The notes beneath the pieces are model-generated. The model searched no databases, was not told the DNA's origin, and saw nothing but the letters and a program-made list of their open reading frames with translations. A stretch of DNA of 63,871 nucleotides, filler included, from Octopus bimaculoides (Eukaryota), in NCBI RefSeq assembly GCF_001194135.2. It is 7 parts of 7 records of this genome, joined end to end, with 100 filler letters (N's around TTAATTAATTAA, not from the genome) between each part and the next. Parts side by side here need not be neighbours in the genome. Positions count along the whole stretch, not along the records: positions 1 to 21,832 come from NC_068992.1; 6 more parts are not named here. One strand, written 5' to 3'. Positions 1 to 21,757 of this stretch are shown here, one piece after another (the stretch's first letter is position 1; every line of letters starts with the position of its first letter). Position numbers and translations under genes: made by a program.

Positions 1-23
1 GTGTATATATATATATATATATA

Positions 24-358: not shown

Positions 359-478
359 CTAATGCTAAGGAACCAGCTATTCCATATACTTCATATGGCA
401 GTACCCTGAACATAATGACAGTTACTACAGCAGATAAACAAATAGATTCAGAGGAAAATACACCAGCATCAGTTCTTG
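359..478 (+). CDS. 120-nt phase 1-1 linker exon of PLAT-repeat membrane-protein gene: (A)NAKEPAIPYTSYGSTLNIMTVTTADKQIDSEENTPASVL(G)
   Basis: Poly-T/CCCAG acceptor, GTATGT donor at 479, only this frame is open; same-length paralogous exon with the same splice sites at 20138-20257. Confidence 0.8.
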
Positions 479-639
479 GTATGTATTTCTTTGATTTACA
501 ATGTCTATGGAATGCTAGTTCCCCCTTCTATAAACCTCTTGATCCATCTCTCCACATTGTTCATATTTATCTGTCTGTCCTTATATTGGTCAGGAGTTGT
601 TTAGCTCAATCTTCTTCTGATATTATATTTTTCCCCCTG

Positions 640-780
640 CACTACCAAGCACTGCACTATCAACTCACAAATGCACTACAGCCTGCATATATAGGACACG
701 AAGGCACTACAATCCCAGAGTCACAGGCAGTAAAAGACTTGGGGATCAGTATGTTCAACAATGCATTATTTTATATTCTG
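640..780 (+). mobile_element. CR1/L2-like LINE reverse transcriptase C-terminal fragment
   Basis: Translation contains TTIPESQAVKDLGI, resembling the VKDLGV thumb motif of CR1/L2 RTs. Confidence 0.5.
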
Positions 781-1228
781 CATCGCCCACCAGATAAGGG
801 ATCGAGGGACCCTATCAAAGGCTTTCTTCAAGTCCACAAAAGCCAAATATAGGGGTTTATCTTTGGCAAGGTATTACTCTTGCAGTTGCCATACCAGGAA
901 TATAGCATCAGTGGTGCTTCTACCTGGCACAAAACCGAACTGCATCTCATCTAAGCAGACTCTCTCCCTAATTAGTTGGGCTATGACCCTCTCCGTAACC
1001 TTCATCACCTGATCCAGCAGTTTGATACCTCTGTAGTTATTTCTATCTAAAGCATCACCTTTACCGTTGTAGCAGTTGACTATGGTGCTGCTACGCCAGT
1101 CATTGGGTATGACTCCATCATGAACTACCTGGTTTACAATACGGGTGACTAGGCCATAACCCACACCACCAGATGTTTTAAGCACCTCAGCAGTGATTCT
1201 TGATGGGCTGCAGGCTTTTCCTGTATAT
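780..1228 (-). mobile_element. RTE-clade LINE reverse transcriptase fragment
   Basis: ORF 874-1254: IPNDWRSSTIVNCYNGKGDALDRNNYRGIKLLDQVMK...QFGFVPGRSTTDAIF; clearly homologous to the RTE at 54184-54760. Confidence 0.92.
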
Positions 1229-1229
1229 A

Positions 1230-1525
1230 TTTTTGTGAAATTAAATGGTGGCAAGATATTTTCTAAATTGGATCTCTCTGACGCGTGCCTACAGATTAGA
1301 GTAGACGATGAATGCTCTAATTTAACAGTGTTTTGTCGACATTTTCAAGATTTTGAAAAAGGCATATAATGAAACAATAACGATTTTGCACTCCAACAAA
1401 TGTACCGAGTGTACCGAGTAACATCTAACCTGAATACACAGTCAGGAATGTTAGCTGCACAATTGATGTTTGCTAGAAAGGTCAGATCTGTTTTTGATAA
1501 GTTGATACCGAGTGAAAATACAAAA
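1230..1525 (+). mobile_element. Ty3/Gypsy pol remnant (RT piece joined to integrase C-terminal piece)
   Basis: FVKLNGGKIFSKLDLSDACLQIRVDDECS (RT motif), then YRVTSNLNTQSGMLAAQLMFARKVRSVFDKLIP (integrase C-terminus). Confidence 0.8.
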
Positions 1526-1750
1526 AAGGTGTGTGTGTGTGTCTTTGTGTTTGTGTCTGTCCCACCACCACTACCCGACCACCAGTATTGGTTTGTTCAC
1601 GTTCCTGTAATGTAGCAGTTTGGCAAAAGAGATTGATACATTAAGTACCAGGCTTCAAACCATAAGTACCGCAGCCGATTCGTTCGATTAAAATCCTTCG
1701 AGGCGGTGCCCCAGCATGGCCGTAGTTCAATGACTGAAAGAAGTAAAAAA
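1526..1750 (+). mobile_element. SINE family B, 3' half
   Basis: (TG)n-GTCCC...GGTGCCCCAGCATGGCC...ACTGAAAGAAGTAAAA; same family as 26180-26515; shared with the duplicated block at 18480-18715. Confidence 0.7.
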
Positions 1751-1823
1751 ATGTATACAAACAGTATTATTACAAACAGTCAATCTATGTAATTAAACAT
1801 TATCTCATGGTGCTTTGTTTCAG

Positions 1824-2080
1824 GTTACTGCTGGAGAATCACATTTTACATTTCAAGCAATTATTTTTCTGGAACCTCAAATTATTTCACTGTTCAATTA
1901 ATCAATGATGAAACACGTGTTTTCTCAAAGAAATTATCTTGTGCAAAAAAATGTAAAAGGGGATCTCAACCAAGCTTTGATTTTTGCACCCCACAAATTG
2001 ATCCAGTAAAAGAATTAAAATTAAATGAAACGGTAAAAAATTTCTTCAAAAAATTCACATCTGGTTGGAGATTGGAAAGC
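1824..2080 (+). CDS. PLAT/LH2-like domain exon A, phase 1-0: (G)YCWRITFYISSNYFSGTSNYFTVQLINDETRVFSKKLSCAKKCKRGSQPSFDFCTPQIDPVKELKLNETVKNFFKKFTSGWRLES
   Basis: TTTGTTTCAG acceptor, GTAAGT donor at 2081, 257-nt open frame. Motifs GT-x-Y-x-x-V-Q-L, RG-x-x-x-SF and W-x-LES follow the PLAT consensus order. Paralogue at 18791. Confidence 0.8.
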
Positions 2081-2689
2081 GTAAGTATTTGGATAGAATT
2101 CTCATTTTTAATCCGTATGTGTGGGTGTGTATGTATGTGTGTGTGTGGATGTGCTTGTGTGTGTGTGTGCATGATATGTGTGTATGCATGTGTGTGATTT
2201 TGCAGCATTATCATGTTACTTAAAAGTTCCTATTTTCGATTCAGGTAATAACATATCAGTATTGAGCTCTTTGGCTACTTTCTCACACTACTTTCAATTC
2301 AGGCATTGAAACAGGTACATAAATACAAGGATATGAAAATATCTCCTTTTAATATGGAATGCAATCATCTCTCTCTCCTTCCCATTCTTTCTCTCTCTCT
2401 CTCACAAAGTAATAGACATACATACACATACAAACACATGCATACATATACATACATACATACATGCATACATACGTATGCATAGATCACTACACCTTGC
2501 TCTGGTATCAGCTGCTACAGTGAATGCAATTGAAAGGCTGACCACTGCATGGTCCACACAGTTATCAATGATAGCTACTAAAGCAACACCTGTTGTTACA
2601 AACAGAGTTAAGCTATCAACAAACATATTCCAGGGTAATAGCTTTTTTTTTTATCTGTAATATTGTTTGTATTGGCAGTGTATCCCTTG

Positions 2690-3350
2690 TCGGCCCTGTT
2701 AACCAAATGCCAAGGCTACACCAGATATAGGAATCGAGTTTAAGCTAGATAAATGCTTATATGTGATAGTCACTTGAGGAAAGATTATTGTCCTGACAGA
2801 GAACATGAATACCAACGGCTTGCCTATCTCCCCAATTTCTAACGATGAAATCTACAAGTACCTCGGAATCGATGAGAATGTAGCATACGTTGGTGCTGTG
2901 ACTAAAGCCAGTAAAACAGCAATAAGAGCAACACTGATAGGATACATGTGAGATGGCGGTAGAGGCATAAGGTCAGTCCAAACAACCTTTGGAATTCGCA
3001 TTGTATCACTCAGATAACACTAGCTGAACAGTAAAGAAAGAAACGAGTACATTCCATGCATACTCAAAAGGAAGAGCAACAACATTATCATAGTTGGAGA
3101 ACTACTGAGTAGGTGTTCTGAGAATCCAGCAGTCTTATGCAAACCAATGGAGGCTGGACTGGCCAACTTAAATAGAAGCTTGAAGGAGAAGCAGGCAGCA
3201 TACCAGCAAAAAGCAATGCATGGGTACATATCCCATAAGCTAGAGAGCAACAACAGTATTGACAGGAAAAGCAGACTCTCCTGGGCCCACAATAGATACA
3301 ATAGGCCCCACCTAGAAGGATTTACCTTCACTGTTCAGAAAATAAGATAG
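2690..3350 (+). mobile_element. R4/Dong-clade non-LTR retrotransposon fragment, decayed
   Basis: DIGIEFKLDKC...GK...YKYLGIDE, GGRGI and MHG...ID...W...LEG motifs, interrupted by stop codons. Confidence 0.75.
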
Positions 3351-3447
3351 CTAAATTCCTTTAACCTGGGCAATGCTGGTTATTTCTGCTAGTATATATG
3401 TATATATATATCATCATCAGTGTCCATGCATGAGTAGGACAATATAC

Positions 3448-3489
<42 letters not shown>

Positions 3490-3546
3490 TTGTTGGGTGT
3501 GTGTTACATGCAACATGGTTTACATTTTTATTTCAATTCTTTGCAG

Positions 3547-3640
3547 ATTAATCTGATGAACTTGAATACTTCAGCTACCTATAGCTGCACATTCAGTAAC
3601 CCTGGTGCTGATGAAAAAGGCTGTAAGCTAAATCCCAAAG
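3547..3640 (+). CDS. PLAT/LH2-like domain exon B, phase 0-1: INLMNLNTSATYSCTFSNPGADEKGCKLNPK(G)
   Basis: TTCTTTGCAG acceptor, GTAAAT donor at 3641, 94 nt. Phase matches the donor at 2081 and completes W-x-LES-I-x-L-x-x-x-x-T-x-x-x-Y. Confidence 0.75.
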
Positions 3641-3694
3641 GTAAATTATATCATATGTCTATGTAGTTAGCAAGCAATATATATATGTATGTAT

Positions 3695-3925
3695 GTCATC
3701 ATCATCGTCATCATCGTGGGTGCTTTTAGGTGCCACTGGCACGAGGGCCAGTCAGGCAGTACTGGCAACGGCCACGTTCAAAATGGTGTATTTTACATGT
3801 CACCTGCACAGGAGCCAGTCCAGCGGCACTGGCAACGATCTCGCTCGAATGCCTTTACACATGCCACCGGCACAAGTGCCAGGGAGGCGACGTTGGCAAC
3901 GATGCATAAATGCGCTATCATAGAA
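3695..3925 (-). mobile_element. SINE-like retroposon piece, same family as 24-202 and 12030-12240
   Basis: GTGGGTGCTTTTA(G/C)GTGCCA...GGCAACG core, closely similar to 12030-12240; (CAT)n at the left end. Confidence 0.65.
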
Positions 3926-4894
3926 AGATTCAAGTAAAAGAACAGAAAAGTTAGACGCGGAGGAATAGAGATAGACACAACAAAGAATATATAGTAAAAT
4001 CATTAAGGGATGTTTAGAATAAACGAAGATAAGATAGAAGATAATTAATGAATGAAACTGTTCTTATATGTTACCCTTTGAATGTTAAAAAGTTAGCTGT
4101 ACAGGATCTTGTTAATCTCTGTCACAGATTTTTAAAAATACTTTACCTTTATTTTCTAATTGATTAATAATTTTAATTAATTTAATTAATTTAGTAAATT
4201 AACCATACTTAATTTTATATCTGTATGTGTGTGTGTGTACATGTGTATATATATATATGTTTATATATGAAATACCTAATGATTTCACTTCTCTACTCCC
4301 ATAATTTAATAACCTGTCTATTGTTTTTTTTTTATATATAACCATTTATTGTATTTTTGCAAGGGTATGTATGCATTAACATTATCGTTGTTGAAATTAA
4401 TTGATGACAATAATTATTTTTATAACTGTATATATTTTTATATTATATATTAATTGTATTGGTACACTGTATTTTCTTGATGGCTTATTTAATGTTCTCG
4501 TTATATTTTCCATATGTTATATATAAATCTCTTTGTATATTCTTCCCTGATGAGATTTTGGCTTATAATAATTAACGAAACTGATTTACTTAAATTAAAT
4601 TTGATTGACTTTATGCTATAAGTGATGAATTGAAACAATTATTCCTATTGTCCATATTCATCCATCTGTCCATATATTTTTTTATTTTTTATTCTTTCAG
4701 TGATCGCTATGTGAATTGTGTCATATGGACAGAAATGTGAATTGTGCCATCTCTGTCAACAACCTGTAGCCTTCTCAGCCTGCAGCTCCACTTTTTCAAG
4801 AACTCAGTAACAATACACTATTTCTTTTTGAATCCTATTATTTGTTTACAACCAAGAAGAATAATCCTTTCTATTATAGAAACAATACCTGAAA

Positions 4895-5075
4895 TTTTAA
4901 GGGAGTGGGTCTAGTCGATTAGATTGATCCCAATGCACAGCTGGTACTTATTTCATCAACCAAAAAAGACAAAGTCAACTCATGCAACATTTAAACTCAG
5001 AACATAAGATGGACAAAATGCTGCTAAGTATTTTGTCCAGTCAGCTAAAAATTCTTCCAGATTGCTGCCTTAGTG
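4895..5075 (-). mobile_element. SINE family A, diverged
   Basis: GTCGAT...CCC...CTGGTACTTATTT...AACTCAGAAC...GCTAAG pattern shared with the copies at 7432-8062. Confidence 0.65.
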
Positions 5076-6104
5076 AAGACGAATAATACAAGGAAGAAGC
5101 GTTACTATAGAAGTGTCATTGTGTCAACATATGCAATTTGAATGACCTATGTCAGTTACTTAAAAAGTTATGCCAACTTTCGCTTTATTTTAGTTACAGT
5201 CCTTATAATATGCTATATACACTATTCATAAATCCTTTTGGAATGTATTTCCCAAATGTACTTTTCTTTGATTTAACTTTTACATACATGGGTTGGTCAT
5301 TATAACCAGATTTATATAATAATATACTGTTTTGAATCGCACTACATTTGGTTTATCCAAACAGAACGTTTGCTAGTTTAAAAATTTACTCGCAAAACTG
5401 TTTCTTTAAATTAGTTCTAACTTAAAATCTGGACATTTATATGACACCAATTATCTCTCATATTCTACCATCCTGCTTGCTACCCAAATAGATAAAGATC
5501 CATAAGATAGAACTCCTTTAGCTCAAGCTTCTTTGGTTATTATATTTTCCTTATTTTATTTTTTCACTGATCCTACTATTCCCATTTCGTTGTTTCCCTT
5601 TCTTCCCTTCTTCTCTTTTGTTATGTATACTTCTACATTTGAGTTATAACTTCCTTTGATGACCTTAAATGTGACACACAGACAAAAACAGACAGGAACA
5701 AGCAGAGTAATATTATAATATTCATTGTTAGAGCTTTAACACTGGTTTTCATATTTGTGACAATGTTAAATTGAACTGTTGTTTCTAGCAAAAGTCTCTG
5801 TCTCGTTCACACTCACGCTTTAAATTCACTTCAGAATCAAAACAATAAACATTGAGCTGTAATTTCTAACCAAAAAAACCTGCCTTCTTTATCATATATC
5901 GCTAGAGAATTTTCTTCAGCGAGGGATTTTTAGACATTTTGTGTCACTAATACTTTTTAGTTAGAAATTCACCTCCTGTAAACCAGTACTTCCCAACCTT
6001 TTTTTCACTTTTGTTACATTTATATTCTTTTCACAATTCAAAATAAAAAAATAATCACTATAAGTGTGACTTTGTTTTTTTTTTCTGTGAATTTATCAGA
6101 ACCA

Positions 6105-6189
6105 ATGGCGGCTAGCTGGTTTGCAAGTATATTTTTGTCGCATTTTGCCCTGTGTTTGCAGTGTCTTCAAATTTTAAATCTTATATACA
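6105..6189 (+). CDS. Candidate first coding (signal-peptide-like) exon MAASWFASIFLSHFALCLQCLQILNLIY, phase 1 end
   Basis: Polypyrimidine tract + CAG at 6097-6099, then ATG at 6105 and a hydrophobic 28-aa stretch. Only a moderate GTGACC donor at 6190. Phase fits the acceptor at 6720. Confidence 0.3.
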
Positions 6190-6269
6190 GTGACCTTGAT
6201 TCTTGAATTAGGGTATAAAATTTCTCCAATAATTATAACATACATTTGTACCATATTGATATATAGAGA

Positions 6270-6515
6270 GTGGAAGTGTGTAGCTTCATGGTAGAGTGTT
6301 GCACTCGTGATCATGAGATTCTGATTTCAATTCCTGGACCAGGTGATGTGTTATGTTCTTAATCAAAGCACTTCATTTCACATTGCTGCACTCCTCTCAG
6401 CTGGTAAAAATGAGTAATCCTGCAACAGACCAATGTCCCACCCAGGGAAGGAACAGACATGTTCCAGAATCCAGGAAACTGGCATTGTGAACCTGTGGCT
6501 TGGAAAAACTTTTTC
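6270..6515 (+). mobile_element. tRNA-derived SINE family D
   Basis: A/B-box-like head (TGGTAGAGTGTTG...GATTTCAATTCC) and GCACTTCATTTCACATTGCTGCA core; inverted relative at 36100-36375. Confidence 0.65.
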
Positions 6516-6719
6516 ATCTTTTTATTTTGGGGCAGGGGTGGGATTGGAGGATATAGTGGATGCAATATTTAGCATGCTCCAGGCCATTGGAACATTTTGA
6601 ACTTGTCCCTTATGTTTCAAACATAATGTGGGAGAGAGGTGATGGTGGTTCTATGTTCCATCAATAAATTTGAAAGAGTATATGTGTTGTTTGAATCTGC
6701 TCTTAAATGTCTATTGCAG

Positions 6720-7021
6720 ACAAGAAAGCAAGAGGCTTAANNNNNNNNNNNNNNNNNNNNNNNNNNNNNNNNNNNNNNNNNNNNNNNNNNNNNNNNNNNN
6801 NNNNNNNNNNNNNNNNNNNNNNNNNNNNNNNNNNNNNNNNNNNNNNNNNNNNNNNNNNNNNNNNNNNNNNNNNNNNNNNNNNNNNNNNNNNNNNNNNNNN
6901 NNNNNNNNNNNNNNNNNNNNNNNNNNNNNNNNNNNNNNNNNNNNNNNNNNNNNNNNNNNNNNNNNNNNNNNNNNNNNNNNCCTGAGAAATACTGTCTTCC
7001 ATACAACCATAGAATTACTGG
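6720..7021 (+). CDS. Exon or exons spanning an N-gap: (D)KKARGL...LRNTVFHTTIELL(G)
   Basis: TTGCAG acceptor just before the gap and a GTGAGT phase-1 donor at 7022 just after it; the interior is unsequenced. Confidence 0.45.
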
Positions 7022-7134
7022 GTGAGTATACCTTAACAAGACCTGGATGAAACTGCTCTGCTTACCCAAAAGGTTATGCATGAATATGAGTTTTAAGAAT
7101 GATGTTAATATTAACATTAACAATTGGGTGGCAA

Positions 7135-8062
7135 GTTGGCAGAATTGATAGCACAGCAGACAAAATGGTTAGCAGCATTTCAATCATATTTATGTTCTGA
7201 ATTCAAATTCTACCCAGGTCAACTTTGCCTTCCTTCCTTTTTGGGTTGATAAAATAAGTACCAGTTGAACACTGGGGTCGATGAAGTTGACTTGTTTTAT
7301 TGACTTGTTTTATGGCTAACATCATCATAATAGTTCCATTGTTTTTAGTGGCAACAGACAATCTCTGAATAAATGAAAATATCAAACAAATATTGTACAG
7401 GAACATCTGTAGGAAGATTTGNNNNNNNNNNGATTGGATCGACCCCAGTACGCAACTAGTACTTATTTTATTGAACCCGAAAGGATGAAAGGCAAAGTTA
7501 ACCTCAGCAGAATTTGAACTCAGAACATAAAGACAGATAAAATACTGCTAAGCCTTTCACCTGGTGTGTTAATATTTCTTGTTTCTTTATTGCCCACAAG
7601 GGGCTAAACTTGGAGGGGACAAACAAGGACAGACAAAGGGATTAAGTCGATTACATCGATTCCAGTGCGTAGCTGGTACTTATTTTATCGATCTCGAAAG
7701 GATGAAAGGGAAAGTCGACCTCGGCGGAATTTGAACTCAGAACGTAACGGCAGACGAAATACCACTAAGCAATTCACCCGGCGCGGTAATGTTTCTGCCA
7801 GCTTGCTGTCTTAAATAAATAAAATATTTATTTCATTATTGCCTGCTGGGGACTAAACATAGATGGGACAAACAAAGACAAACAAAGGGATTAAGTCAAT
7901 TACATTGACCCCAGTGCAAAACTGGTACTTATTTAATTGACCCCGAAAGATGAAAGGCAAAGTTGACCTCGGTGGAATTTGAATTTAGAATGTAAAGACA
8001 GACGAAATAAAGTTAAGCGTTTCGCCCAGCATGCTAACGTTTCTGCCAGCTAGCCGCCTTAA
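7135..8062. mobile_element. Cluster of four family-A SINEs: one on + (7135-7295) and three head-to-tail on - (about 7432-7575, 7580-7810, 7835-8062)
   Basis: Repeated GGCGAAAT...TTCTGAGTTCAAATT...TTTCATCCTTTCGGGGTC...AAGTACCAG consensus. Confidence 0.85.
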
Positions 8063-8772
8063 TAAATAAAATGTTAAACAAGTAAGTATTGTACAGGAAC
8101 ATCTTTGGGAGATTTGTAAATCATAGATAGAAAAAAAACAAAGAATGCTAAGGATTGGTTTTGAAGTGAAGTTTTAAAGAACTTCCTGCTCTCAGTTACT
8201 ATTCAAGTGAATTATTTACGCATGCATACACACATATGCCCATTTTTATGGCACACACATATGTATGTATGTATGTATATATATATACCTATATTTATAA
8301 ATAATTATCTACATAACGTACACAAACGCATGCACACAAGTATTTAAAGTCACACCAATACACTAAAATTATACACAGAAAGGAACATAGAATCTTATTG
8401 ACAAAATATATTAAATCTCACTTTAGACACAAACCCCAAAATATAAGAAGTCACTGTATAGCTTATACATATTGATTCTACACTCTTCATTGGAATTAGT
8501 TTATCAAACCAACGAAAGAACTAACAAACAAACTGATCCCAACAAGATTTGGAATCAGAATATAAAGGATCAAAATTATAAAAAAAAAAAACAACGTTTA
8601 GCTTGACGCTGCATTGATTCGGAGTCGTTGCTGCACTTGTGGAAATTATATTTTTAATTAACCAGTAAGTTGTGGCTCCTTATTTCCTCCATTTATTTCT
8701 TTTTATCGTTTATTTTTTGCTTGTTTTGTCCATTGAAATATAGAACATGCTGTGGCACAACCTTAAAGGGTT

Positions 8773-9116
8773 CAGGAGTTCTCAACCATTTTTTATCTAC
8801 AGACCCCTTTCATAACTATTTTATTCTAGTTGACCCCCATCTCATTACTATTCAATGTTCAAAAACTAGTTTTATAGAAACTTCTTTTAAAATTCCTATT
8901 TTGTTTTTCACACATTAACTTGAGTAGGTTGAACCATATAAAATGTTAAAGAAAAAACACCCAGCTGTTTCTTGCAATACATACAGATAAAGCAAAATTT
9001 TTTCAGGGGCCCTTAAACTGCTATTGGGGATCCCCAATTTTCTATTTTGTTTCTTGGGCCCCTAAAATATTATATGGACCCTAAAGGGCCATATAGACTT
9101 CGGTTGAGAACCACTG
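8773..9116. mobile_element. Non-autonomous hAT-like MITE inserted into a family-B SINE
   Basis: Terminal inverted repeats CAGGAGTTCTCAACC / GGTTGAGAACCACTG; SINE sequence resumes on both sides. No clean 8-bp TSD seen. Confidence 0.7.
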
Positions 9117-10034
9117 GTTTAGATAAACAAATTAACGCCAGTACTTATTTTATTAGTCTTTATCACCAAACCACTAAGTTATGAGGATGTGAACAAACCA
9201 ACATTCACGGTTGAGCAATGGTGGAGGGACAAACAGAAATGCACACGCACACACACACATACATCTAGACAACAGGCTTCTACACAATTTCTGTCTACCA
9301 AATTCACTCAGAGCTGTAGTAGAAGACACTTGACCAAAGTGCCACACAGTGGGACTGATCCAAAACCAAAGAGTTGCAAAGCATGCTTCTTAACCACACA
9401 GCCATGCTAGTGTATTAATTATTATTTCTTCTTGGAACAAACTTGGAAAAATCCAAAATTTATTGAAAAATAGTAATTTATGCATTTTTATGGCATATAT
9501 TTATGACAGGTTGAATTTGCCTTTCATCCTTTCGGGGTTGATAAACGAAGTACTAATCCAGGGTGATGGATGAGCAGAACAGCAAAAACATTGGATCAAG
9601 TGCTTTTTGGCATTTGTTCAACTCGATGTGTTGGAGGAACCAAATTAAACAAAGAGTTCAAATCTTGTCATAGTCCTGTTTGGTTGACAATCTTAATCTG
9701 TTATCCAATTTAACATCACTGCTTGCCATTTTAGGTGCTTTCACTGGAGTCCACGATATTGCTCACGTTTAGATTAGGTCTTTGATTTGAGGCTTCTTTC
9801 CTTTCTCCCTCCCACTCATCTCAGAGTGCTCTGTATGTGTGTATGTATACATACATATTTAGTAGAAAGTGGGTTATACATCTTTAGATTGTATACCTGA
9901 CTTCCTACTATAAAATTAAAATATAACGGAACGCTGAACTCCAGACTAAACAACTTAAACAACATTTTATTTAGGTGGTAAATATATACATCTTTAGTTC
10001 TTGTTGTTACAGCTTCTGTGTGTATGAGCATAGT

Positions 10035-10220: not shown

Positions 10221-10329
10221 CATACACATTAGTATACATACATACAAACATGATGTAAAACCACCACATGTTTTCGCAGCTAGCGACATACCAACAGATT
10301 CATAGTTCCTGCCAGCCATACTACATTAC

Positions 10330-12029: not shown

Positions 12030-12240
12030 GAGTGTGGGTGCTTTTACGTGCCACCGGCACAAAGGCCAGTCAGGCGGTACTGGCAACGGCCACGCTCAAA
12101 ATGGTGTATTTTACGTGCCACCCGCATGAGAGCCAGTCCAGGGGCACTGGCAATGATCTTGCTCAAAAGTCCTTACACATACCACAGGCACAAGTGCCAG
12201 AAAGGCGACACTGGGCACAGGTGCCATCACGATTTCGCTT
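12030..12240 (-). mobile_element. SINE-like retroposon piece, paralogue of 3715-3925
   Basis: ORFs at 12032 and 3693 translate almost identically. Confidence 0.65.
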
Positions 12241-12389
12241 TAAATTTTAACCCATTTTCCAAGAGTTTAATTTCTTCTTTAGATAATATTTGTAATGGGA
12301 AATTTTGAGTAACTGTTCTGACTTTCAATAAAAAGTGATATATTTTCTCTATTTTTAAAAAGTCATTCAAATATTTTGTTTACTTTCAG

Positions 12390-12438
12390 ATTATGAATTG
12401 CATTTTCATTTTACTTTGTCTCCTGCAAATAGTTTACA
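12390..12438 (+). CDS. Candidate 49-nt exon, phase 1-2: (D)YELHFHFTLSPANSL
   Basis: TTACTTTCAG acceptor, GTAAGT donor at 12439, open frame with beta-strand-like alternation. A phase-2 partner exon was not found and may lie in gap 14276-15000. Confidence 0.4.
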
Positions 12439-13046
12439 GTAAGTATTCTAACTTGTAACTTCCTTCATGAATTCTTGAAACAATAATTTTCATCTCATCA
12501 AAACATAGACAACGATTCATTTCAGTTTTATATAATGTTACAATATAATATTTCAGCTGCATTATCATGATTGTGTGTGTATGTGTGTTTTTGTGTGCAC
12601 GCGCGTGTGTGTGTTTGATTGTGTGCGCGTGTATATTTATATATATCATCATCATTATCATTGTCATTTAACATTTGCCTTCCATCTTAGCATGGGTTGG
12701 ACAGTTTAATAGGAGCTCACCAGGCAAGCGACTCCACTATATGTTTGTGTCTATTTTGGCATAGATTTTGGGTTGGACACCCTTCCTAACACCAACCACC
12801 TCACAGAGTAAGCTGAGTGCTTCTTATGTGGCACCAGCATACAAGAGGTCAGTTCGTGGCATGGTTTTTACAACTGGATGCTCTTTCAAATGCTGACCAC
12901 TTTACAGTGTGGACTGGATGCTTTTTAAGTGGCACCAGCACTGGCAGGGTCACCAAGTAACTTGCAAAACAAGGAATCTTTGAGAGGGAAGGGGACATTG
13001 GAGGAGGTGAGCATGTGTTAGATGATGAGAGGTTAGAGTGTGTGTA

Positions 13047-14094: not shown

Positions 14095-15903
14095 TATATC
14101 TTTTACTTTTTATCTTTTTTCTTTTACTTGTTTCAGTCATTGGAGTGTGACCATGCTGGGGCACTTCCGTGAAAGATTTTAGTTGAACAAATCAAACTAA
14201 GCACTTGTTATTTTTCTAAGATGGAAACTAAAAGAAGCCTGTCATATATATACATACATATATATATATATATANNNNNNNNNNNNNNNNNNNNNNNNNN
14301 NNNNNNNNNNNNNNNNNNNNNNNNNNNNNNNNNNNNNNNNNNNNNNNNNNNNNNNNNNNNNNNNNNNNNNNNNNNNNNNNNNNNNNNNNNNNNNNNNNNN
14401 NNNNNNNNNNNNNNNNNNNNNNNNNNNNNNNNNNNNNNNNNNNNNNNNNNNNNNNNNNNNNNNNNNNNNNNNNNNNNNNNNNNNNNNNNNNNNNNNNNNN
14501 NNNNNNNNNNNNNNNNNNNNNNNNNNNNNNNNNNNNNNNNNNNNNNNNNNNNNNNNNNNNNNNNNNNNNNNNNNNNNNNNNNNNNNNNNNNNNNNNNNNN
14601 NNNNNNNNNNNNNNNNNNNNNNNNNNNNNNNNNNNNNNNNNNNNNNNNNNNNNNNNNNNNNNNNNNNNNNNNNNNNNNNNNNNNNNNNNNNNNNNNNNNN
14701 NNNNNNNNNNNNNNNNNNNNNNNNNNNNNNNNNNNNNNNNNNNNNNNNNNNNNNNNNNNNNNNNNNNNNNNNNNNNNNNNNNNNNNNNNNNNNNNNNNNN
14801 NNNNNNNNNNNNNNNNNNNNNNNNNNNNNNNNNNNNNNNNNNNNNNNNNNNNNNNNNNNNNNNNNNNNNNNNNNNNNNNNNNNNNNNNNNNNNNNNNNNN
14901 NNNNNNNNNNNNNNNNNNNNNNNNNNNNNNNNNNNNNNNNNNNNNNNNNNNNNNNNNNNNNNNNNNNNNNNNNNNNNNNNNNNNNNNNNNNNNNNNNNNN
15001 ACGATATTTCGTCTGTCTTTAAGTTCTGAGTTCAAATGTAAAGAAGACAAAAGACAAAGACATGTGAGGGAACAATAAGTAGATGTATTAATTTGATGCT
15101 CAGGTTGAGTGGATAAGTCTCTGATGCTTTGAGCTTTGCTCTTTAATGGAAAGAGGAAAAACAATGGAGAGAGACGGAAAAAATTTAGAGAGAAATGAAA
15201 TGTGTTAGAATTAACGGTTTAACATGATGAAATGACTAGAAAAAAAAAAAAGAGGCTGAGTGGAGGGGAGATAATAACGGTGACCTGGTTGAACACATAC
15301 ACCTGTGTGTATGTAAGAATGATATGTGTGAGTATCTATGTGTGAATGGGAGCAAGTGCATGTGAATGTATGTTTGTGTGAGCTTAAAATTATATGAGCT
15401 TGTGTGTGTATGTGTATGTGTGTTTGTGTAGACGTGTGTATATGTGTGAGAGTGTGAGAGGCTGTGCAAAGCATACATATGTGTGTGTGTGTGTGTCTGT
15501 TTGTCCCCACCACCACTTGATAACACATGTTGGTTTGTTTATGTCCCCATACCTTACCAATTCAGCAAAAAAGAACTTATAAAATAAGTAATAGGCTTAA
15601 AATGAAAAACTAAATATCGGACTTCATTCCTTTGACCAAAATTCTCCAAAGAATTGCCCCAGCATGGCTGCAGTTTAAAGACTGAAACAAGTAACATATG
15701 AAAAATAAAGATTCTGTTTAAATATCTGGATCAATAGCCTAATACTACAGTTAATAACAACCATTGACATGAAAGATACAACTAATATTCAGAAAATCTT
15801 TGAACTTTGAACCTCAGCAGTCTTTCAAATAATATAAATTTTCCATCAAATGAATTTAAGTTTTTTGTCCAATTTCTGACACTAATTATCAATAATTCTC
15901 TAG

Positions 15904-15975
15904 GCAATGAGGATCAGAATAAACATTCCAAGAGTGCAAAAGATCTACAAATACAGAACAATCGAATGCCAAAAG
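15904..15975 (+). CDS. 72-nt phase 1-1 linker exon: (G)NEDQNKHSKSAKDLQIQNNRMPK(G)
   Basis: CTGAC/CTAAT branch-like motifs, TTCTCTAG acceptor, GTATGT donor at 15976, open frame; phase fits PLAT exon 18791. Confidence 0.65.
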
Positions 15976-16827: not shown

Positions 16828-17272
16828 AGGCTTTCACCGATTTTTCAACACCCTGATCCATATTTGGCGTGTAAACATAAGCTCCTCATCAGTGCTTTCA
16901 TTTTCGTGATTCCTGGAGATCCCATGTGGAATTCTTTTAGCATACGATTTTACAAAGAAACAGGTATTACAACCCGCTGAGTGTGCATAAGTATGTCATC
17001 ACATATCGAATACCATTTCGAAATTGTTACACTCAGCTACAGGAGTTTTTGCATTTGTTCCTGACTTTTACTATTTTTTTCATTTTTATTAAGAACACAT
17101 CCTTCTCTGCTTTAACTTTTATTTCCTCTGAAGTGATGGGCAGTTTGTGTACTATGTTGCAGAGTAGGTATTTTATTTCGATTTCAGCTTTTAATGCCAC
17201 TATTACTCTGTCCTCTAACTGTTCATTGTATTTAAGTATCAATCTTGACAGCCCATCCGCATGTCCCAAGTA
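16828..17272 (-). mobile_element. Ty3/Gypsy pol remnant (RNase H end to integrase zinc-binding region)
   Basis: GHADGLSRLI...EDRVIVAL...LPITSEEIK, then RVVIP..LKEFHMGSPGITKMKALMRS, with a stop and a frameshift. Confidence 0.85.
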
Positions 17273-18790
17273 GGTATACCCAAGAGAGCACACATGTACA
17301 CACACATACACACACACACATATACACAAGGTAACTTGTACACATGCATTAATGAGCTGACGCCATCAGGTCAAGTGCATATGCGCGCGCACACACACAG
17401 ACGCACACATACATACTCACCACATGCACACATCCACGCACTCATACAGCAGGTATGCCCTTCCCCCCACACACACTGGTATTTGGTTTCGTTTAAGATT
17501 CTTGCACATAACACCCATCCAAATGCCACAAACATCCTGTCCAACACGTGGTCCAAGAAGTACATTTTCTACTTGGTGTATTCGATGTCGCTGATTATTC
17601 CATCCTTATGCAACAAAACTATGTGACCCATATTGACCAATAACAGCCGAATCTCCAGTAGTCATGCTGAATTTCCTCCACCACTCCGTTCGGATGCCTA
17701 AACCTGAAAAGCTAGGTTCGTGTGAAGCGCCTACGAAACTTTAAGTTGCATTGAGCTGAATTAAACTGTTATTAGATACTAATATATGTACTCCTAGGAA
17801 ATGTGTTGAGTAATTCTTTCTTACTTTTGTCCATTCAGTCGTACAAATATGTATGCGGTGGTGGTGTAATCTGCATAGTATACATACATACAGGGTTAAT
17901 TTATCCATAAATTGGAGATTGAAAAAGAATGACAAACTGCTTTAATCCATTTTTGAAACTTATTGGGTTCTTGTCAGAAGTGTCTACATCCTAGAGAAAT
18001 GAGTAGACAATCTGTTTTTATACACAACAGATCCAGTAGCTTCAAGGAACTGGAGCTATTTATTTGCAAGCTATAAGTATTTAACACTTTATTTGACACC
18101 AATAGACTGTCAACGGAGATTCGTACAAATATACGATGAGCTATTTTCAGGTTCTATCTATCAAATCCACTCACAATGCTTTCATTAGTCTGAGGTTATA
18201 ATAGAAGAAACTTGCTCAAGGTGCTGTGAATGGGATGGAACGCAAGCCCACATGGTTTGGAAGTAAGCTTCACCACTACAGAGTCACACCTGTACCTCAA
18301 AAATATTTATTAAGTAGTTATAAATATAGACGCAAACGTTGTTATGTAGTAGGAAGTTTACTTCCCCAGCACACACATGGTTCTGAGTTCAATCCTACTG
18401 CTTGACACCTAGGGCAAATGTCGTTTACTATAGCCCCAGGCCAACCAAAGCTTTGTGAGTAGATTTAACGAAGAAGCCCATCCTATATGTATATGTGTGT
18501 ATGTTTGTGTGTGTGTGTCTTTGCATTTGTGTTTGCCCCACCACCACTACTCGACCACCAGTATTGATTTGTTCATGTTCTTGTAACATAGCGGTTTGGC
18601 AAATGAGATCAATGCAATAAGCACCAGGCTTTAAACAACCGATTTGTTCAACTAAAATCCTTCGAGGCGGTGCCCCAGCATGGCCGTAGTTCAATGACTG
18701 AAAGAAGTAAAAGATAAAATGTATACAAACAGTATTATTACAAACAGTCAATCTATGCAATAAACATTATCTCATTGTGCTTTGTTTCAG

Positions 18791-18875
18791 GTTACTGCTG
18801 GAGAATCAAATTCTATATTCCAAGGAAACTTTTGTCTGGAACCTCAAACTATATCACTGTTCAATTAATCAATGA
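18791..18875 (+). CDS. PLAT/LH2-like exon A, second copy, truncated by N-gap: (G)YCWRIKFYIPRKLLSGTSNYITVQLIN
   Basis: 74/85 nt identical to 1824-1908, with the same acceptor and a near-identical upstream intron. Confidence 0.8.
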
Positions 18876-20137
18876 NNNNNNNNNNNNNNNNNNNNNNNNN
18901 NNNNNNNNNNNNNNNNNNNNNNNNNNNNNNNNNNNNNNNNNNNNNNNNNNNNNNNNNNNNNNNNNNNNNNNNNNNNNNNNNNNNNNNNNNNNNNNNNNNN
19001 NNNNNNNNNNNNNNNNNNNNNNNNNNNNNNNNNNNNNNNNNNNNNNNNNNNNNNNNNNNNNNNNNNNNNNNNNNNNNNNNNNNNNNNNNNNNNNNNNNNN
19101 NNNNNNNNNNNNNNNNNNNNNNNNNNNNNNNNNNNNNNNNNNNNNNNNNNNNNNNNNNNNNNNNNNNNNNNNNNNNNNNNNNNNNNNNNNNNNNNNNNNN
19201 NNNNNNNNNNNNNNNNNNNNNNNNNNNNNNNNNNNNNNNNNNNNNNNNNNNNNNNNNNNNNNNNNNNNNNNNNNNNNNNNNNNNNNNNNNNNNNNNNNNN
19301 NNNNNNNNNNNNNNNNNNNNNNNNNNNNNNNNNNNNNNNNNNNNNNNNNNNNNNNNNNNNNNNNNNNNNNNNNNNNNNNNNNNNNNNNNNNNNNNNNNNN
19401 NNNNNNNNNNNNNNNNNNNNNNNNNNNNNNNNNNNNNNNNNNNNNNNNNNNNNNNNNNNNNNNNNNNNNNNNNNNNNNNNNNNNNNNNNNNNNNNNNNNN
19501 NNNNNNNNNNNNNNNNNNNNNNNNNNNNNNNNNNNNNNNNNNNNNNNNNNNNNNNNNNNNNNNNNNNNNNNNNNNNNNNNNNNNNNNNNNNNNNNNNNNN
19601 NNNNNNNNNNNNNNNNNNNNNNNNNNNNNNNNNNNNNNNNNNNNNNNNNNNNNNNNNNNNNNNNNNNNNNNNNNNNNNNNNNNNNNNNNNNNNNNNNNNN
19701 NNNNNNNNNNNNNNNNNCCTCCGAAAACCTTCCATACCTTGCCACGATTCAGAATACCGAAAGGATCTTCACCTCTTACATCACACCTTTCTTCCTACTT
19801 TAACGCCGAGGTGGTATAATTTCCTGGGAGAGAAATAATTTTGCGGCTGAGGATAGCTTTATATTGTAAATTATACACATATAAAGCTTGAAACACGTGT
19901 ACCGCGGAATCCTTTGTAGTTTTGTTGTTATTTTTGGATTTACAATTTATTCTTTCACCGCAACCACTAGCTAGCATACACAGGTGCTTACAATTGTCAA
20001 GTATTACCTCTAAATTTTAATTTACCTATATATATATATATATATATGCATGTATGTATATGTATCTATATATGTGTGTGTATATATATTTAGTAAAAGG
20101 CAAAAGATTTATATGCTTAACTTTTTTTAATACCCAG

Positions 20138-20257
20138 AACATGTTAAGAAGCCAAATATTCCATATAATCCAAATAGCAGTACCTCGAACATAATAACAA
20201 TTACTACAGAAAATGACCAAATAGATTCAGGGGAAAATACATCAGCATTAGTTCTTG
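20138..20257 (+). CDS. 120-nt phase 1-1 linker exon, second copy: HVKKPNIPYNPNSSTSNIITITTENDQIDSGENTSALVL(G)
   Basis: CCCAG acceptor, GTGTGT donor; colinear with 359-478 with no indels (97/120 nt identical); flanking introns also homologous. Confidence 0.8.
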
Positions 20258-20514
20258 GTGTGTATTTCTTTGATTTACAGTGTATATGGAATGCTAGTTC
20301 CGCCTTTTTTAAACTTCTTCATCCATCGCTCCATTCTGTCCATATTCATCCATCAGGCCATACATAGGATAGGACTTGTTTAGCTCAATCTTCTGATGAT
20401 ATTATATTTTCCCTTTTTAATTCTTTCATAGATCCCTCTGTGAATTGTGTCATCTCTGTCAACAACCAATACAAGTTCATACATTTTTGTATATATACAC
20501 ATACACACAGATAG

Positions 20515-20555
<41 letters not shown>

Positions 20556-20569
20556 GCATTTGATGGTGT

Positions 20570-20720
20570 ATTTCACATCTTCTCTAATCGAACTGGTCAG
20601 CCCGATGTATAGAGAAGGGCAGAGAGAGCAAGTGATGCAGTAGATGACATTGGTAGAAGTGCAGGTGAAGTGTATACGAGATAGATATTTATTCAAGTGA
20701 GTCTGAATAATGGTGTCGCT
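20570..20720 (-). mobile_element. Penelope-like element GIY-YIG endonuclease fragment
   Basis: HFTCTSTNVIYCITCSLCPSLYIG: the VIY...CxxC..YIG signature. Confidence 0.8.
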
Positions 20721-20924
20721 ATGTATATCTTTATGTGTGAGTGTGAGACAACTAATGTTAGTGTGTTTACATCTCTGTAACTTAGCAGTTCGGGAAAAGA
20801 CACCGATAGAATAAGCATCAGACTTACAAAGAATTATCCCAGGATAATATCATTTATCTATTTATTTATTTTTTTTTTTGTCTTTATAGATACTGATACT
20901 ACATTTTTTATTTTGTATTTGTAG

Positions 20925-20987
20925 ATACTGCTCATACTTCAGCCTCTGCTCATAAGAAGCTGAATAAGAAAGCTCAAAGAAAAATAG
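20925..20987 (+). CDS. 63-nt phase 1-1 juxtamembrane exon: (D)TAHTSASAHKKLNKKAQRKI
   Basis: TTTGTAG acceptor, GTATGA donor at 20988, open frame; joins the TM exon in frame. Confidence 0.65.
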
Positions 20988-21553
20988 GTATGAGTGTATT
21001 ATACAATATATTTAAGAATATAATGCTGTAAAGTAAGCNNNNNNNNNNCTCTCTCTCTCTCTCCTGCTTGCTTTCACTCTCCCCTATCTCTCTCTCACTA
21101 ACCATTGACACTACTCTTTCCCTTCCACCTCCTCATGTCCCTTCCATTACACCAATCCAGCATTGTCCCCTTTTGACTATCACAACAATAAGTGTTCTAA
21201 CCACCCTACTTTAACTATTCCCTCAACACCTCACCTATAGTCATCCTTTTCCCCTCCTATTCTCCCTATCAGCCAGTGCATGACTGAGATGACACAAAAG
21301 CATGACAAAGCAACAAATTGTGTTGATGTTCATCAGAACAATGACTCCAGAGAAAGAATATTTGAGATGGCTGTCTTCCTAAATACAGTATGAAAGATGA
21401 TTAAAATGATTCATGGTGTTTGAATGAATTCAAATAATATTAAAGGTAACAGAAAAGCTACAAATTGTTGAAATGTTTAACCACAAAAGAAGCAAAAATC
21501 AAACAAGCAAATTCTCCTTTTTAATGCATTCCATTTTTCTCTTAACATTTCAG

Positions 21554-21620
21554 TAATTCTATGCAGTGTTCTTATACCAACAATAGTCCTTCTTTGTATG
21601 TTATGCATCATAGTTACCAG
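21554..21620 (+). CDS. Transmembrane exon, phase 1-2: (V)ILCSVLIPTIVLLCMLCIIVT(R)
   Basis: TTTCAG acceptor, CAG|GTATGT donor; encodes a 22-residue uncharged hydrophobic segment. Confidence 0.75.
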
Positions 21621-21714
21621 GTATGTAATATAAGACTACATCTTACTACTGAGACTGTTTTAGAGTATCATTATTATTTTAACTTTTTTCTCTATTTCTA
21701 CTGTACTGAGTCAG

Positions 21715-21757
21715 AGGACGAAGAGCAGTGCTCATCTCCCATTTTCAAGACATATAA
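21715..21757 (+). CDS. Probable terminal coding exon: (R)GRRAVLISHFQDI*
   Basis: Polypyrimidine tract + TCAG acceptor, phase 2, basic residues after the TM segment. An alternative AG at 21709-21710 gives a different tail. Confidence 0.45.

What the first reader, a model, noticed from the sequence alone, without database searches (positions are those of the whole stretch)
359..21757. Hidden modular membrane protein built from repeated PLAT-like domains and phase-1 linker exons
SEEN: a phase-compatible exon chain the ORF track does not resolve: 359-478 (phase 1-1), 1824-2080 (1-0), 3547-3640 (0-1), 15904-15975 (1-1), 18791-gap, 20138-20257 (1-1), 20925-20987 (1-1), 21554-21620 (TM, 1-2) and 21715-21757 (tail). 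Exons 1824+3547 give a ~117-aa domain with the PLAT/LH2 motif order (GT, RG..SF, W.LES.I). ESTABLISHED: PLAT domains are lipid/protein-binding beta-sandwiches known from lipoxygenases, lipases, polycystin-1 and the multi-PLAT protein LOXHD1. Symmetrical phase-1 modules plus a separate TM exon are typical of shuffled cell-surface receptors. INFERENCE: a Cys-containing multi-PLAT single-pass protein is an architecture I do not recognise and may be a lineage-specific receptor or adhesion family. A linker exon upstream of the first PLAT suggests more repeats 5' of the window.
Basis: partly seen in the sequence, partly recalled or inferred. Interest (0 to 1): 0.85.

Follow-up and report, generated by a model that had tools for sequence, protein, structure and literature searches.

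The report
Two octopus PLAT-like genes, not one
The exons are real, but they belong to two neighbouring genes of an octopus-only family: an already annotated secreted protein with three PLAT-like domains, and an apparently unannotated membrane-anchored relative.

Summary
The window is Octopus bimaculoides chromosome CM046612.1 (100% identical to L003). Splice sites plus open frames alone prove nothing: about 450 such chance segments lie on each strand.

The chain joins two tandem genes.
- Gene A is LOC106876762 (XP_014780935/6, UniProt 'Ig-like domain-containing protein'). It starts upstream of the window. It encodes a secreted protein with three PLAT-like domains and no membrane helix.
It continues with 15904-15975, 18791-gap, 20138-20257, 20925-20987 and the membrane exon 21554-21620.

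The 'tail' exon 21715-21757 has no support. Relatives carry a 100-140 aa tyrosine-rich tail encoded about 2 kb further on, beyond the window.

Pfam's PLAT model does not match. Two AlphaFold models (pLDDT 64 and 72) nevertheless hit only PLAT domains in the PDB (TM up to 0.72). The family was found only in Octopus. Comparison with O. vulgaris shows that the in-window PLAT module of gene A was inserted into an intron. Function remains inferred.

The parts
359..478 (+). Gene A (LOC106876762): Ser/Thr-rich linker cassette exon, phase 1-1. Present in isoform X1 and skipped in X2.
   Evidence: 100% identical to P0013 residues 274-313; absent from P0012 and P0014.
640..4660 (+). Duplicated segment carrying both exons of one PLAT-like module, inserted into the intron that follows the linker exon. 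Boundaries are approximate.
   Evidence: Window 306-636 matches L001 67377-67705 and window 4665-5984 matches L001 67685-69005. These are contiguous in O. vulgaris and in gene B. The interior, 1529-3694, matches the PLAT exon region L001 39248-49738.
1824..2080 (+). Gene A: first-half exon of the third PLAT-like domain (phase 1 to 0).
   Evidence: 100% identical to P0013; AG/GT sites; same exon boundaries in O. vulgaris.
3547..3640 (+). Gene A: second-half exon of the third PLAT-like domain (phase 0 to 1).
   Evidence: 100% identical to P0013 residues 400-430.
4701..4714 (+). The acceptor AG is specific to this copy.
   Evidence: One match to the pattern, with 0.02 expected by chance. Sequence. 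The coding range of the gene on record ends at L003 22801, which is window 4714. Gene B and O. vulgaris lack the AG at this site.
6050..6100 (.). Duplication breakpoint. To the left is intron-after-linker sequence; to the right is the 5' flanking region of the next gene. Gene A therefore lacks stalk, membrane-helix and tail exons.
   Evidence: Window 6049-6100 matches L001 69232-69281. Window 6096-9864 is collinear with L001 2621-8368, upstream of the O. vulgaris gene.
12390..12438 (+).
   Evidence: 100% protein identity to residues 1-16 of gene A. Sequence. Mean column identity across gene A, gene B and O. vulgaris is 95%, flanks included.
15712..15774 (+). Decayed copy of the alternative first exon used by paralogue P0001: no in-frame ATG, a stop codon upstream, and donor AT instead of GT.
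   Evidence: 81% protein identity to P0001 residues 8-28; sequence; lies next to a dispersed repeat.
15904..15975 (+). Gene B: exon 2, the N-terminal segment after the signal peptide (phase 1-1).
   Evidence: Homologue of gene A exon 2 with the same splice sites.
18791..18875 (+). Gene B: start of the PLAT-like first-half exon, cut by the assembly gap.
   Evidence: GYCWRIKFYIPRKLLSGTSNYITVQLIN. The exon and its upstream intron are 87-90% identical in DNA to the gene A modules.
18876..19717 (.). Assembly gap that should hold the rest of the PLAT-like domain of gene B (inferred, not seen).
   Evidence: No copy of the second-half exon lies in 19718-20137.
20138..20257 (+). Gene B: Ser/Thr-rich linker exon (phase 1-1).
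   Evidence: Paralogue of 359-478 (58% protein, 81% DNA identity); matches the linker exons at L001 67429-67548 and L002 26586-26693.
20925..20987 (+). Gene B: stalk exon (phase 1-1).
   Evidence: Matches the stalk of P0003 and P0001. P0001 reads through its donor into the intron.
21303..21647 (+). Block 95.4% identical to both O. vulgaris paralogues, made up of about 250 nt of upstream intron, the membrane-helix exon and 27 nt after the donor.
   Evidence: elsewhere in the locus identity is 80-88%.
21554..21620 (+). Gene B: transmembrane exon (VILCSVLIPTIVLLCMLCIIVT, phase 1 to 2), flanked by basic residues.
   Evidence: 100% protein identity to L001 and L002; Kyte-Doolittle 19-residue mean 2.96.
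21715..21757 (+).
   Evidence: No homology to O. vulgaris beyond 21647. The cytoplasmic exon of relatives lies 1.9-2.3 kb after the membrane exon.

Best explanation
The window holds the 3' part of one gene and most of the next, in a tandem array of an Octopus-restricted family.

Family building blocks:
- a signal peptide and a short N-terminal exon;
- one or more ~117-aa cysteine- and glycan-bearing beta-sandwich domains with a PLAT/LH2-like fold, each split over two exons that together are phase 1-1;
- a Ser/Thr-rich linker and stalk;
- a very conserved membrane helix;
- in relatives, a 100-140 aa acidic, tyrosine-rich cytoplasmic tail.

Shown:
- Gene A (LOC106876762) is a truncated upstream duplicate. 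It lost the stalk, membrane-helix and tail exons at a breakpoint near 6.05-6.1 kb.
- It gained an extra PLAT module by insertion of a ~4 kb duplicated segment into the intron after its linker exon.
- It ends in a new 4-codon exon, so it encodes a secreted protein with three PLAT-like domains.
- Gene B (12393 to beyond 21832) keeps the ancestral type I membrane layout.

Inferred:
- The membrane forms act as cell-surface recognition receptors.
- Their PLAT-like ectodomain binds a lipid surface or a protein ligand.
- Their tail signals through tyrosine phosphorylation.
- Gene A supplies a soluble multivalent binder or decoy.
- Module-wise alternative splicing and fast ectodomain evolution diversify binding.
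For: Identity and annotation:
- The window is 100% identical to L003 (CM046612.1).
- P0013, P0012, P0002 and P0014 are isoforms of gene A, and all end VIAM-stop.
- Gene A has no hydrophobic segment after its signal peptide.

Second gene:
- Signal exon at 12393-12438 with an ATG and a consensus donor.
- Exon 2 homology.
- The exon order matches the O. vulgaris genes for P0003 and P0004.

Rearrangements: the insertion and the breakpoint are seen against O. vulgaris and against gene B.

Fold:
- AlphaFold models with pLDDT 63.5 and 71.6, pTM 0.59 and 0.68, with eight strands.
- All top 50 Foldseek PDB hits in both runs are PLAT-bearing proteins (12-, 5-, 8R-, 11R- and 15-lipoxygenases, pancreatic lipases, lipoprotein lipase, Rab6IP1). 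The best is TM 0.72, rmsd 3.0 A over 118 columns.
- hhalign against six verified PLAT domains aligns 82 columns in register, P=0.027. Controls: C2 domain P=0.51, beta2-microglobulin P=0.16.

Extracellular character: signal peptide, two conserved N-glycan sequons and four to six Cys per domain (four invariant).

Restricted range: a profile search of 1.84 billion representative proteins found only Octopus relatives.

Fast ectodomain evolution:
- dN/dS is 0.48-1.64 for the PLAT exons.
- The linker exon is 81% identical, against 83-92% for its flanking introns.
- The PLAT exon is 87% identical, against 91.5% for its upstream intron.
- The membrane-exon block is 95% identical between species.

Tail: tail exons with repeated acidic Tyr motifs are present in O. 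vulgaris, in O. sinensis, and upstream of gene A in O. bimaculoides at L003 3766-4020.
Against: - No RNA data were available, so exon joining in gene B is inferred from phase and homology only.
- The gap at 18876-19717 hides most of gene B's domain, and the window ends before any cytoplasmic exon.
- No annotated O. bimaculoides protein carries the membrane helix, so gene B could be broken or unexpressed.
- Pfam PF01477 and PDB sequence searches find no PLAT match.
- The structure models are of moderate confidence and rest on 2-6 closely related sequences.
- The dN/dS values rest on few substitutions and are also compatible with relaxed constraint.
- Nothing tested here bears on ligand, lipid binding, expression site or phosphorylation.
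Confidence: 0.75

Rival explanations
1. One reading: one long gene whose transcript runs from the multi-PLAT exons (359-3640) through 15904-15975 and the second PLAT to the membrane exon. This would give a multi-PLAT single-pass receptor, with the signal exon at 12393 as an unused relic.
For: The junction 3640 (phase 1) to 15904 (phase 1) is in frame. Tandem family members are known to produce read-through chimeras. The terminal VIAM exon is short and derives from intron sequence.
Against: - Two annotation pipelines, and all four isoforms on record, stop at 4712-4714.
- The exon at 12393 keeps its ATG, a consensus donor and 100% protein identity to gene A's signal peptide.
- 6096-9864 is homologous to the 5' flank of the O. 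vulgaris gene.
- The O. vulgaris genes are single units with this exon order.
Confidence: 0.07
2. Gene B is not a working gene. It would be a decaying duplicate, or a scaffold join of unrelated contigs that only looks like a gene.
For: - Five gaps lie in the window, and one removes most of the domain.
- No annotated O. bimaculoides protein has the membrane helix or the tail.
- Sequence after 21647 has no counterpart in O. vulgaris.
- A decayed first-exon relic lies at 15712-15774.
- dN/dS is near 1.
Against: - Every visible exon of gene B is open, with intact AG/GT sites and compatible phases.
- The exon order is collinear with O. vulgaris over 9 kb.
- The signal and membrane exons are 95-100% conserved.
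- Gaps in this assembly are enough to explain the missing annotation.
Confidence: 0.12
3. The domain is not a PLAT homologue. It would be another beta-sandwich (Ig-like, as UniProt labels it, or C2-like), and the Foldseek hits would reflect general sandwich geometry in a mediocre model.
For: - There is no PF01477 match.
- The UniProt name is 'Ig-like domain-containing protein'.
- Model pLDDT is only 64-72.
- Identity to the hits is 10-19%.
- hhalign probability is low (1.8%).
Against: - Two separate models both give only PLAT-bearing proteins, from four unrelated families, among the top 50 hits, with no Ig or C2 entry.
- TM reaches 0.72 over the full domain length.
- The models have eight strands, as in PLAT.
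- The profile alignment to PLAT is in register over 82 columns and beats the Ig and C2 controls.
- No Ig family in Pfam matches at E<=10.
Confidence: 0.12

Closest known systems
PLAT/LH2 domains of lipoxygenases and of pancreatic and lipoprotein lipases (Pfam PF01477)
   Same: The size is the same (~115-120 aa). Both are predicted or known eight-stranded beta-sandwiches. The motif order is the same (aromatic-x-hydrophobic first strand, G-T loop, R-G..S-F, W-x-L-x-x-I). These are the best and only class of structural matches. In lipases the domain is also extracellular.
   Different: No sequence-level match to the Pfam model. Four to six cysteines (four invariant) and two N-glycan sites per domain. 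Not attached to a catalytic domain. Each domain is split over two exons that together form a phase 1-1 cassette.
Multi-PLAT proteins LOXHD1 and polycystin-1/REJ family
   Same: Gene A strings three PLAT-like domains in one polypeptide. Polycystin-type proteins also combine PLAT with membrane anchoring.
   Different: No detectable sequence relationship. LOXHD1 is cytoplasmic, and the polycystin-1 PLAT domain faces the cytoplasm. Here the domains follow a signal peptide and are extracellular. The membrane form is single-pass with probably one domain.
Annotated but uncharacterised Octopus proteins: LOC106876762 (XP_014780935/6; UniProt A0A0L8GHW4, GI40, GJ50, GHR7), LOC106876757, O. vulgaris CAI9731026 and CAI9731029, O. 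sinensis LOC118765596 and LOC118765597
   Same: Gene A is LOC106876762 itself. Gene B shares every module with the O. vulgaris genes.
   Different: None of these entries is described as PLAT-like, and none has a Pfam domain on record. The gene B product has no entry. The O. vulgaris and O. sinensis models are partial or merged.
Tandemly arrayed, fast-evolving invertebrate recognition receptors that have soluble and membrane forms (a comparison from general knowledge, e.g. snail FREPs)
   Same: Tandem array, lineage restriction, ectodomain exons diverging as fast as or faster than introns, module-wise isoforms, and a secreted paralogue next to membrane paralogues.
   Different: A different domain type. 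No expression, ligand or immune data. This analogy was not tested here.

Membership tests
PLAT/LH2 domain (Pfam PF01477) | Match to the family HMM at or above the gathering score | tested here: not met
   No PF01477 hit at E<=10 for the window domain or for any of five family members. A profile search of PDB sequences found nothing.
PLAT/LH2 domain (Pfam PF01477) | Eight-stranded beta-sandwich that superposes on solved PLAT domains | tested here: met
   Two AlphaFold models (pLDDT 63.5 and 71.6) with eight strands. All top 50 Foldseek PDB hits are PLAT-bearing proteins, E down to 1.2e-4 and TM up to 0.72. This rests on prediction, not experiment.
PLAT/LH2 domain (Pfam PF01477) | Profile-profile similarity in register with known PLAT domains | tested here: inconclusive
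   hhalign of A4 against six PLAT domains verified in the PDB: 82 columns, P=0.027, probability 1.8%. Controls: C2 domain P=0.51, beta2-microglobulin P=0.16.
PLAT/LH2 domain (Pfam PF01477) | Binding of membranes, lipid or partner protein, often Ca2+-dependent | not testable with these tools
   Needs a binding assay.
Multi-PLAT proteins (LOXHD1 / polycystin-1 type) | Several PLAT domains in one polypeptide | tested here: met
Gene A isoform X1 has three domains, and the third is encoded in the window.
Multi-PLAT proteins (LOXHD1 / polycystin-1 type) | Sequence relationship to LOXHD1 or PKD1/REJ proteins | tested here: not met
   An exhaustive profile search found only Octopus proteins; the remaining hits are repeat noise.
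Ig-like domain proteins (the UniProt label of gene A) | Match to an immunoglobulin-superfamily model or fold | tested here: not met
   No Ig family in Pfam at E<=10. No Ig fold among the top 50 Foldseek hits. hhalign against beta2-microglobulin gives P=0.16 over 8 columns.
Type I single-pass membrane protein (gene B) | N-terminal signal peptide and one membrane helix with basic residues on the cytoplasmic side | tested here: met
   MNCIFILLCLLQIVY at 12393-12438. VILCSVLIPTIVLLCMLCIIVT, flanked by RKI and R, with Kyte-Doolittle mean 2.96.
Type I single-pass membrane protein (gene B) | Both features on one transcript with an unbroken reading frame | not testable with these tools
   No RNA data. 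The gap at 18876-19717 interrupts the coding sequence, and the 3' end lies outside the window.

The most novel reading that the evidence does not exclude
Octopuses may carry a private receptor system: arrays of type I receptors with an extracellular, disulfide-bonded PLAT-like lipid- or surface-binding domain and a phosphotyrosine-signalling tail, alongside secreted multi-domain paralogues. Diversity would come from exon-module duplication, intronic insertion of modules, and splicing that even recombines half-domains. P0002 and P0014 join the first half of domain 1 to the second half of domain 2. This would be a new class of invertebrate recognition molecule.
Probability: 0.15. Interest if true: 0.7.

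Novelty: new variant of a known kind. Interest (0 to 1): 0.4.

Why it matters
The finding corrects a tempting but wrong gene model, in which exon phase compatibility bridged two tandem genes. It assigns a fold to a set of 'uncharacterised' or 'Ig-like' Octopus proteins that no sequence model recognises. It points to an apparently unannotated membrane-anchored member in O. bimaculoides. The locus is also a clean example of domain gain by insertion of a phase-symmetric exon pair into an intron, and of a secreted paralogue born by truncating a receptor gene. If the family proves to be a recognition receptor system it would interest cephalopod biologists. As it stands, it is one of many lineage-specific families in these genomes.

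Tried and rejected
- Pfam scans of the spliced chains and of five family domains found no PLAT or Ig family. Only weak, sub-threshold hits to single-pass stalk families (TMEM154, Mid2) appeared for the C-terminal chain.
- PDB sequence searches with one sequence and with a profile found nothing.
- The word-index protein search with the five-sequence profile returned nothing at all, not even known members. It says nothing about distribution.
- Contig look-ups for P0001 and P0012 failed, because only the longest isoform is on record. P0013 worked.
- I first took the 81% match of P0001's first exon at 15712-15774 for the start of gene B. I rejected this: there is no in-frame ATG, a stop codon lies upstream, the donor is AT, and the site adjoins a dispersed repeat. 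The true signal exon is at 12393.
- A search for stalk, membrane-helix or linker exons of gene A between 3640 and 12393 found none.
- Rfam found no RNA family in the window.
- Literature searches for the accessions and for octopus PLAT proteins found no relevant paper.
- Hits P0005-P0009 of the exhaustive search are repeat or low-complexity noise.

Full report
**1. What is in the sequence**

That alone is not evidence. The + strand of this AT-rich window holds 449 AG..GT, phase 1-1, open segments of 60-260 nt, and the - strand holds 470. The exons are validated by homology instead.

A self-comparison shows two duplicated blocks. Block 306-635 matches 20086-20413 at 83%. Block 1530-1908 matches 18506-18875 at 87%, where the gap cuts it. 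So the linker exon and the first PLAT-like exon each occur twice.

**2. Identity of the locus**

The word-index search found one relative, O. bimaculoides XP_014780931 (P0001). The exhaustive profile search added P0002 (UniProt A0A0L8GJ50, 'Ig-like domain-containing protein', O. bimaculoides). It also added two neighbouring O. vulgaris proteins, P0003 and P0004. A further search added O. sinensis LOC118765596/7 and O. bimaculoides LOC106876762 isoforms X1 and X2 (P0013, P0012).

The genomic locus of P0013 (L003, GCA_001194135.2, CM046612.1:8766033-8798833) is 100% identical to the window. Window position 1 is L003 position 18088. The window is therefore Octopus bimaculoides.

**3. Gene A**

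Isoform X1 (434 aa) reads as follows:
- signal peptide;
- a short N-terminal exon;
- domain 1 (L003 11991-12251 and 14054-14147);
- domain 2 (L003 15318-15578 and 16470-16563);
- linker (window 359-478);
- domain 3 (window 1824-2080 and 3547-3640);
- V-I-A-M and a stop codon.

The last four codons come from an exon at 4701-4714 with a strong acceptor (ttattctttcag) and TGA at 4712-4714. The coding range of the gene on record ends exactly there (L003 22801).

X2 skips the linker exon. The UniProt isoforms P0002 and P0014 join the first half of domain 1 to the second half of domain 2. After the signal peptide the product has no hydrophobic segment (maximum 19-residue Kyte-Doolittle mean 0.56). 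Gene A is therefore a secreted protein with three domains. It is already annotated, though uncharacterised.

**4. Gene B**

P0002 residues 1-16 match window 12393-12440 at 100%. The sequence shows an acceptor (ttactttcag), ATG at 12393, and the exon end TAC A followed by GTAAGT at 12439, which is phase 1. This exon and its flanks are about 95% conserved among gene A, gene B and O. vulgaris.

It joins in frame to 15904-15975, giving Y-S-N-E-D-Q-N-K. That exon is the homologue of gene A's exon 2 and has the same splice sites. Then follow 18791-18875 (cut by the gap), linker 20138-20257, stalk 20925-20987 and the membrane exon 21554-21620.

The O. vulgaris genes have this same order: signal, N-terminal exon, two domain exons with identical boundaries and phases, linker, (stalk), membrane exon, and a large cytoplasmic exon.

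The search with P0004, which carries the membrane helix and tail, found no O. bimaculoides protein with these parts. Gene B seems to be unannotated.

**5. How the two genes arose**

The comparison is with O. vulgaris.
- Window 306-636 matches L001 67377-67705 (linker exon and the start of the next intron).
- Window 4665-5984 matches L001 67685-69005 (the continuation of that intron).
- The ~4 kb between them (1529-3694) matches the region of the two domain exons (L001 39248-49738).

Gene B and O. vulgaris are uninterrupted at this point. So a duplicated segment carrying both exons of a domain (257 + 94 = 351 nt, phase 1-1) was inserted into the intron after the linker.

At about 6050-6100 the homology jumps from L001 69.3 kb to L001 2.6 kb. 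Window 6096-9864 is collinear with the 5' flank of the O. vulgaris gene. Gene A is thus a truncated upstream copy without stalk, membrane-helix or tail exons. Its terminal exon uses an AG that gene B and O. vulgaris lack.

Upstream of gene A, L003 3766-4020 encodes a cytoplasmic-tail exon of a third member.

**6. Gaps**

- 6741-6980 is bridged collinearly (L001 3263 to 3381).
- 7422-7431 lies in the same stretch between genes A and B, which is collinear with O. vulgaris on both sides (window 6981-7421 and 8087-9864). The sequence just to its right is a repeat with many matches, so this gap is not bridged one-to-one. It touches no exon.
- 14275-15000 and 21039-21048 lie in introns of gene B, and the order of their flanks is preserved.
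- 18876-19717 interrupts the domain of gene B. The rest of the first-half exon and the whole second-half exon are not visible anywhere in 19718-20137. That gene B has a complete domain is an inference.

**7. The tail**

The block 21303-21647 is 95.4% identical to both O. vulgaris paralogues, against 80-88% elsewhere. It comprises about 250 nt of intron, the membrane exon and 27 nt after the donor. All similarity ends at 21647.

In O. vulgaris the next coding exon lies 1.9-2.3 kb further on. It encodes RHRYKKSKSNLISEEM... followed by repeats rich in acidic residues and tyrosine. The window ends 212 nt after the membrane exon.

**8. The domain**

- Pfam finds no PLAT, and no Ig, at E<=10. PDB sequence searches find nothing.
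- AlphaFold with two sequences gave pLDDT 63.5 and pTM 0.59. With six rows it gave 71.6 and 0.68, with eight strands and all five models at or above 60.
- In both Foldseek searches of the PDB, all top 50 hits are proteins with a PLAT domain: pancreatic lipases and related proteins, lipoprotein lipase, several lipoxygenases and Rab6IP1. The best is E=1.2e-4, TM 0.72 and rmsd 3.0 A over 118 columns.
- A targeted hhalign test used six PLAT domains whose sequences I checked against the PDB. It aligned 82 columns in register with P=0.027. A C2 domain gave P=0.51 and beta2-microglobulin gave P=0.16.
- The fold claim is therefore supported. Membership in the Pfam family is not shown by sequence.
- The domains follow a signal peptide. 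They carry two conserved N-glycan sequons and four to six cysteines each, four of them invariant across the family. They are therefore extracellular.

**9. Evolution**

- Between paralogues and species, dN/dS of the domain exons is 0.48-1.64.
- The linker exon is 81% identical between genes A and B, while its flanking introns are 83-92% identical.
- The first-half domain exon is 87% identical, against 91.5% for its upstream intron.
- Counts are small. Still, the ectodomain evolves at least as fast as intron, whereas the signal and membrane exons are nearly invariant.
- The exhaustive search found no relative outside Octopus.

**10. Function (inferred)**

The layout has five notable features:
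- an extracellular binding domain on a glycosylated stalk;
- a conserved membrane helix;
- a tyrosine-rich tail in relatives;
- a tandem array with a secreted multi-domain paralogue;
- fast-evolving ectodomains.

This suggests a surface recognition receptor with a soluble counterpart. By analogy with PLAT domains, the domain would contact a lipid surface or a protein partner. No result here tests this.

**11. Verdict**

The gene model is wrong in one key join and at the 3' end. Half of the finding is already annotated. Interest is moderate.

Noticed in passing
window 21303-21647: The membrane exon, about 250 nt of upstream intron and 27 nt after the donor are 95.4% identical to two O. vulgaris paralogues, against 80-88% for the rest of the locus. 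Conserved intron flanks of this kind often mark a regulated, alternatively used exon (membrane versus secreted forms).
   Followed up: partly
L003 11991-16563 (off-window part of gene A); proteins P0002 and P0014: Two UniProt isoforms join the first-half exon of domain 1 to the second-half exon of domain 2, making a hybrid domain. This could be real combinatorial splicing, or a transcript-assembly artefact across near-identical repeats.
   Followed up: no
window 15712-15774: A relic of the alternative first exon used by paralogue LOC106876757 (81% protein identity). It has a stop codon upstream, no in-frame ATG and donor AT. It lies directly after a dispersed repeat.
   Followed up: yes
window 1529-1750, 15476-15709, 18506-18730, 14104-14193 (-), 9138-9310 (-): A dispersed SINE-like repeat of ~200 nt (core ...GCCCCAGCATGGCCGTAGTTCAATGACTGAAA...) has many copies in the O. 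vulgaris loci. It sits just upstream of both first-half domain exons. No Rfam family matches it.
   Followed up: partly
window 4-201: Another dispersed repeat, with at least seven copies in L001 at 78-91% identity, lies just upstream of the linker exon of gene A. It is absent from the same place in gene B.
   Followed up: no
window 781-1254 (-): A reverse-transcriptase fragment, probably from a LINE-type retroelement (the element type was not tested), lies in the intron between the linker and the PLAT exon. Its RVT_1 match is weak (E=7e-4, below the cut-off). Copies occur in both O. vulgaris loci.
   Followed up: partly
window 7432-8072: Three to four tandem copies of a ~220-250 nt unit (about 80% identical) lie between genes A and B. 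Related copies are scattered in the O. vulgaris loci. Tandem Repeats Finder did not report them at score 80.
   Followed up: no
window 3716-3891 and 12034-12209: A GC-rich element (87% identical copies) sits just after the last domain exon of gene A and about 200 nt upstream of the signal exon of gene B. The second copy contains a 67-nt unit repeated 1.9 times (12042-12168). Copies also occur in O. vulgaris.
   Followed up: no
L003 3766-4020: A cytoplasmic-tail exon of a third family member lies about 6 kb upstream of gene A's start codon. Its membrane exon was not found and may lie in the gap at L003 2803-3402.
   Followed up: partly
L001 28729-28791, ~30026-30378 and 33207-33308: In O. vulgaris the exon 2 region is triplicated. 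The copy most like the O. bimaculoides exon has donor TT instead of GT, and the annotated model uses another copy.
   Followed up: partly
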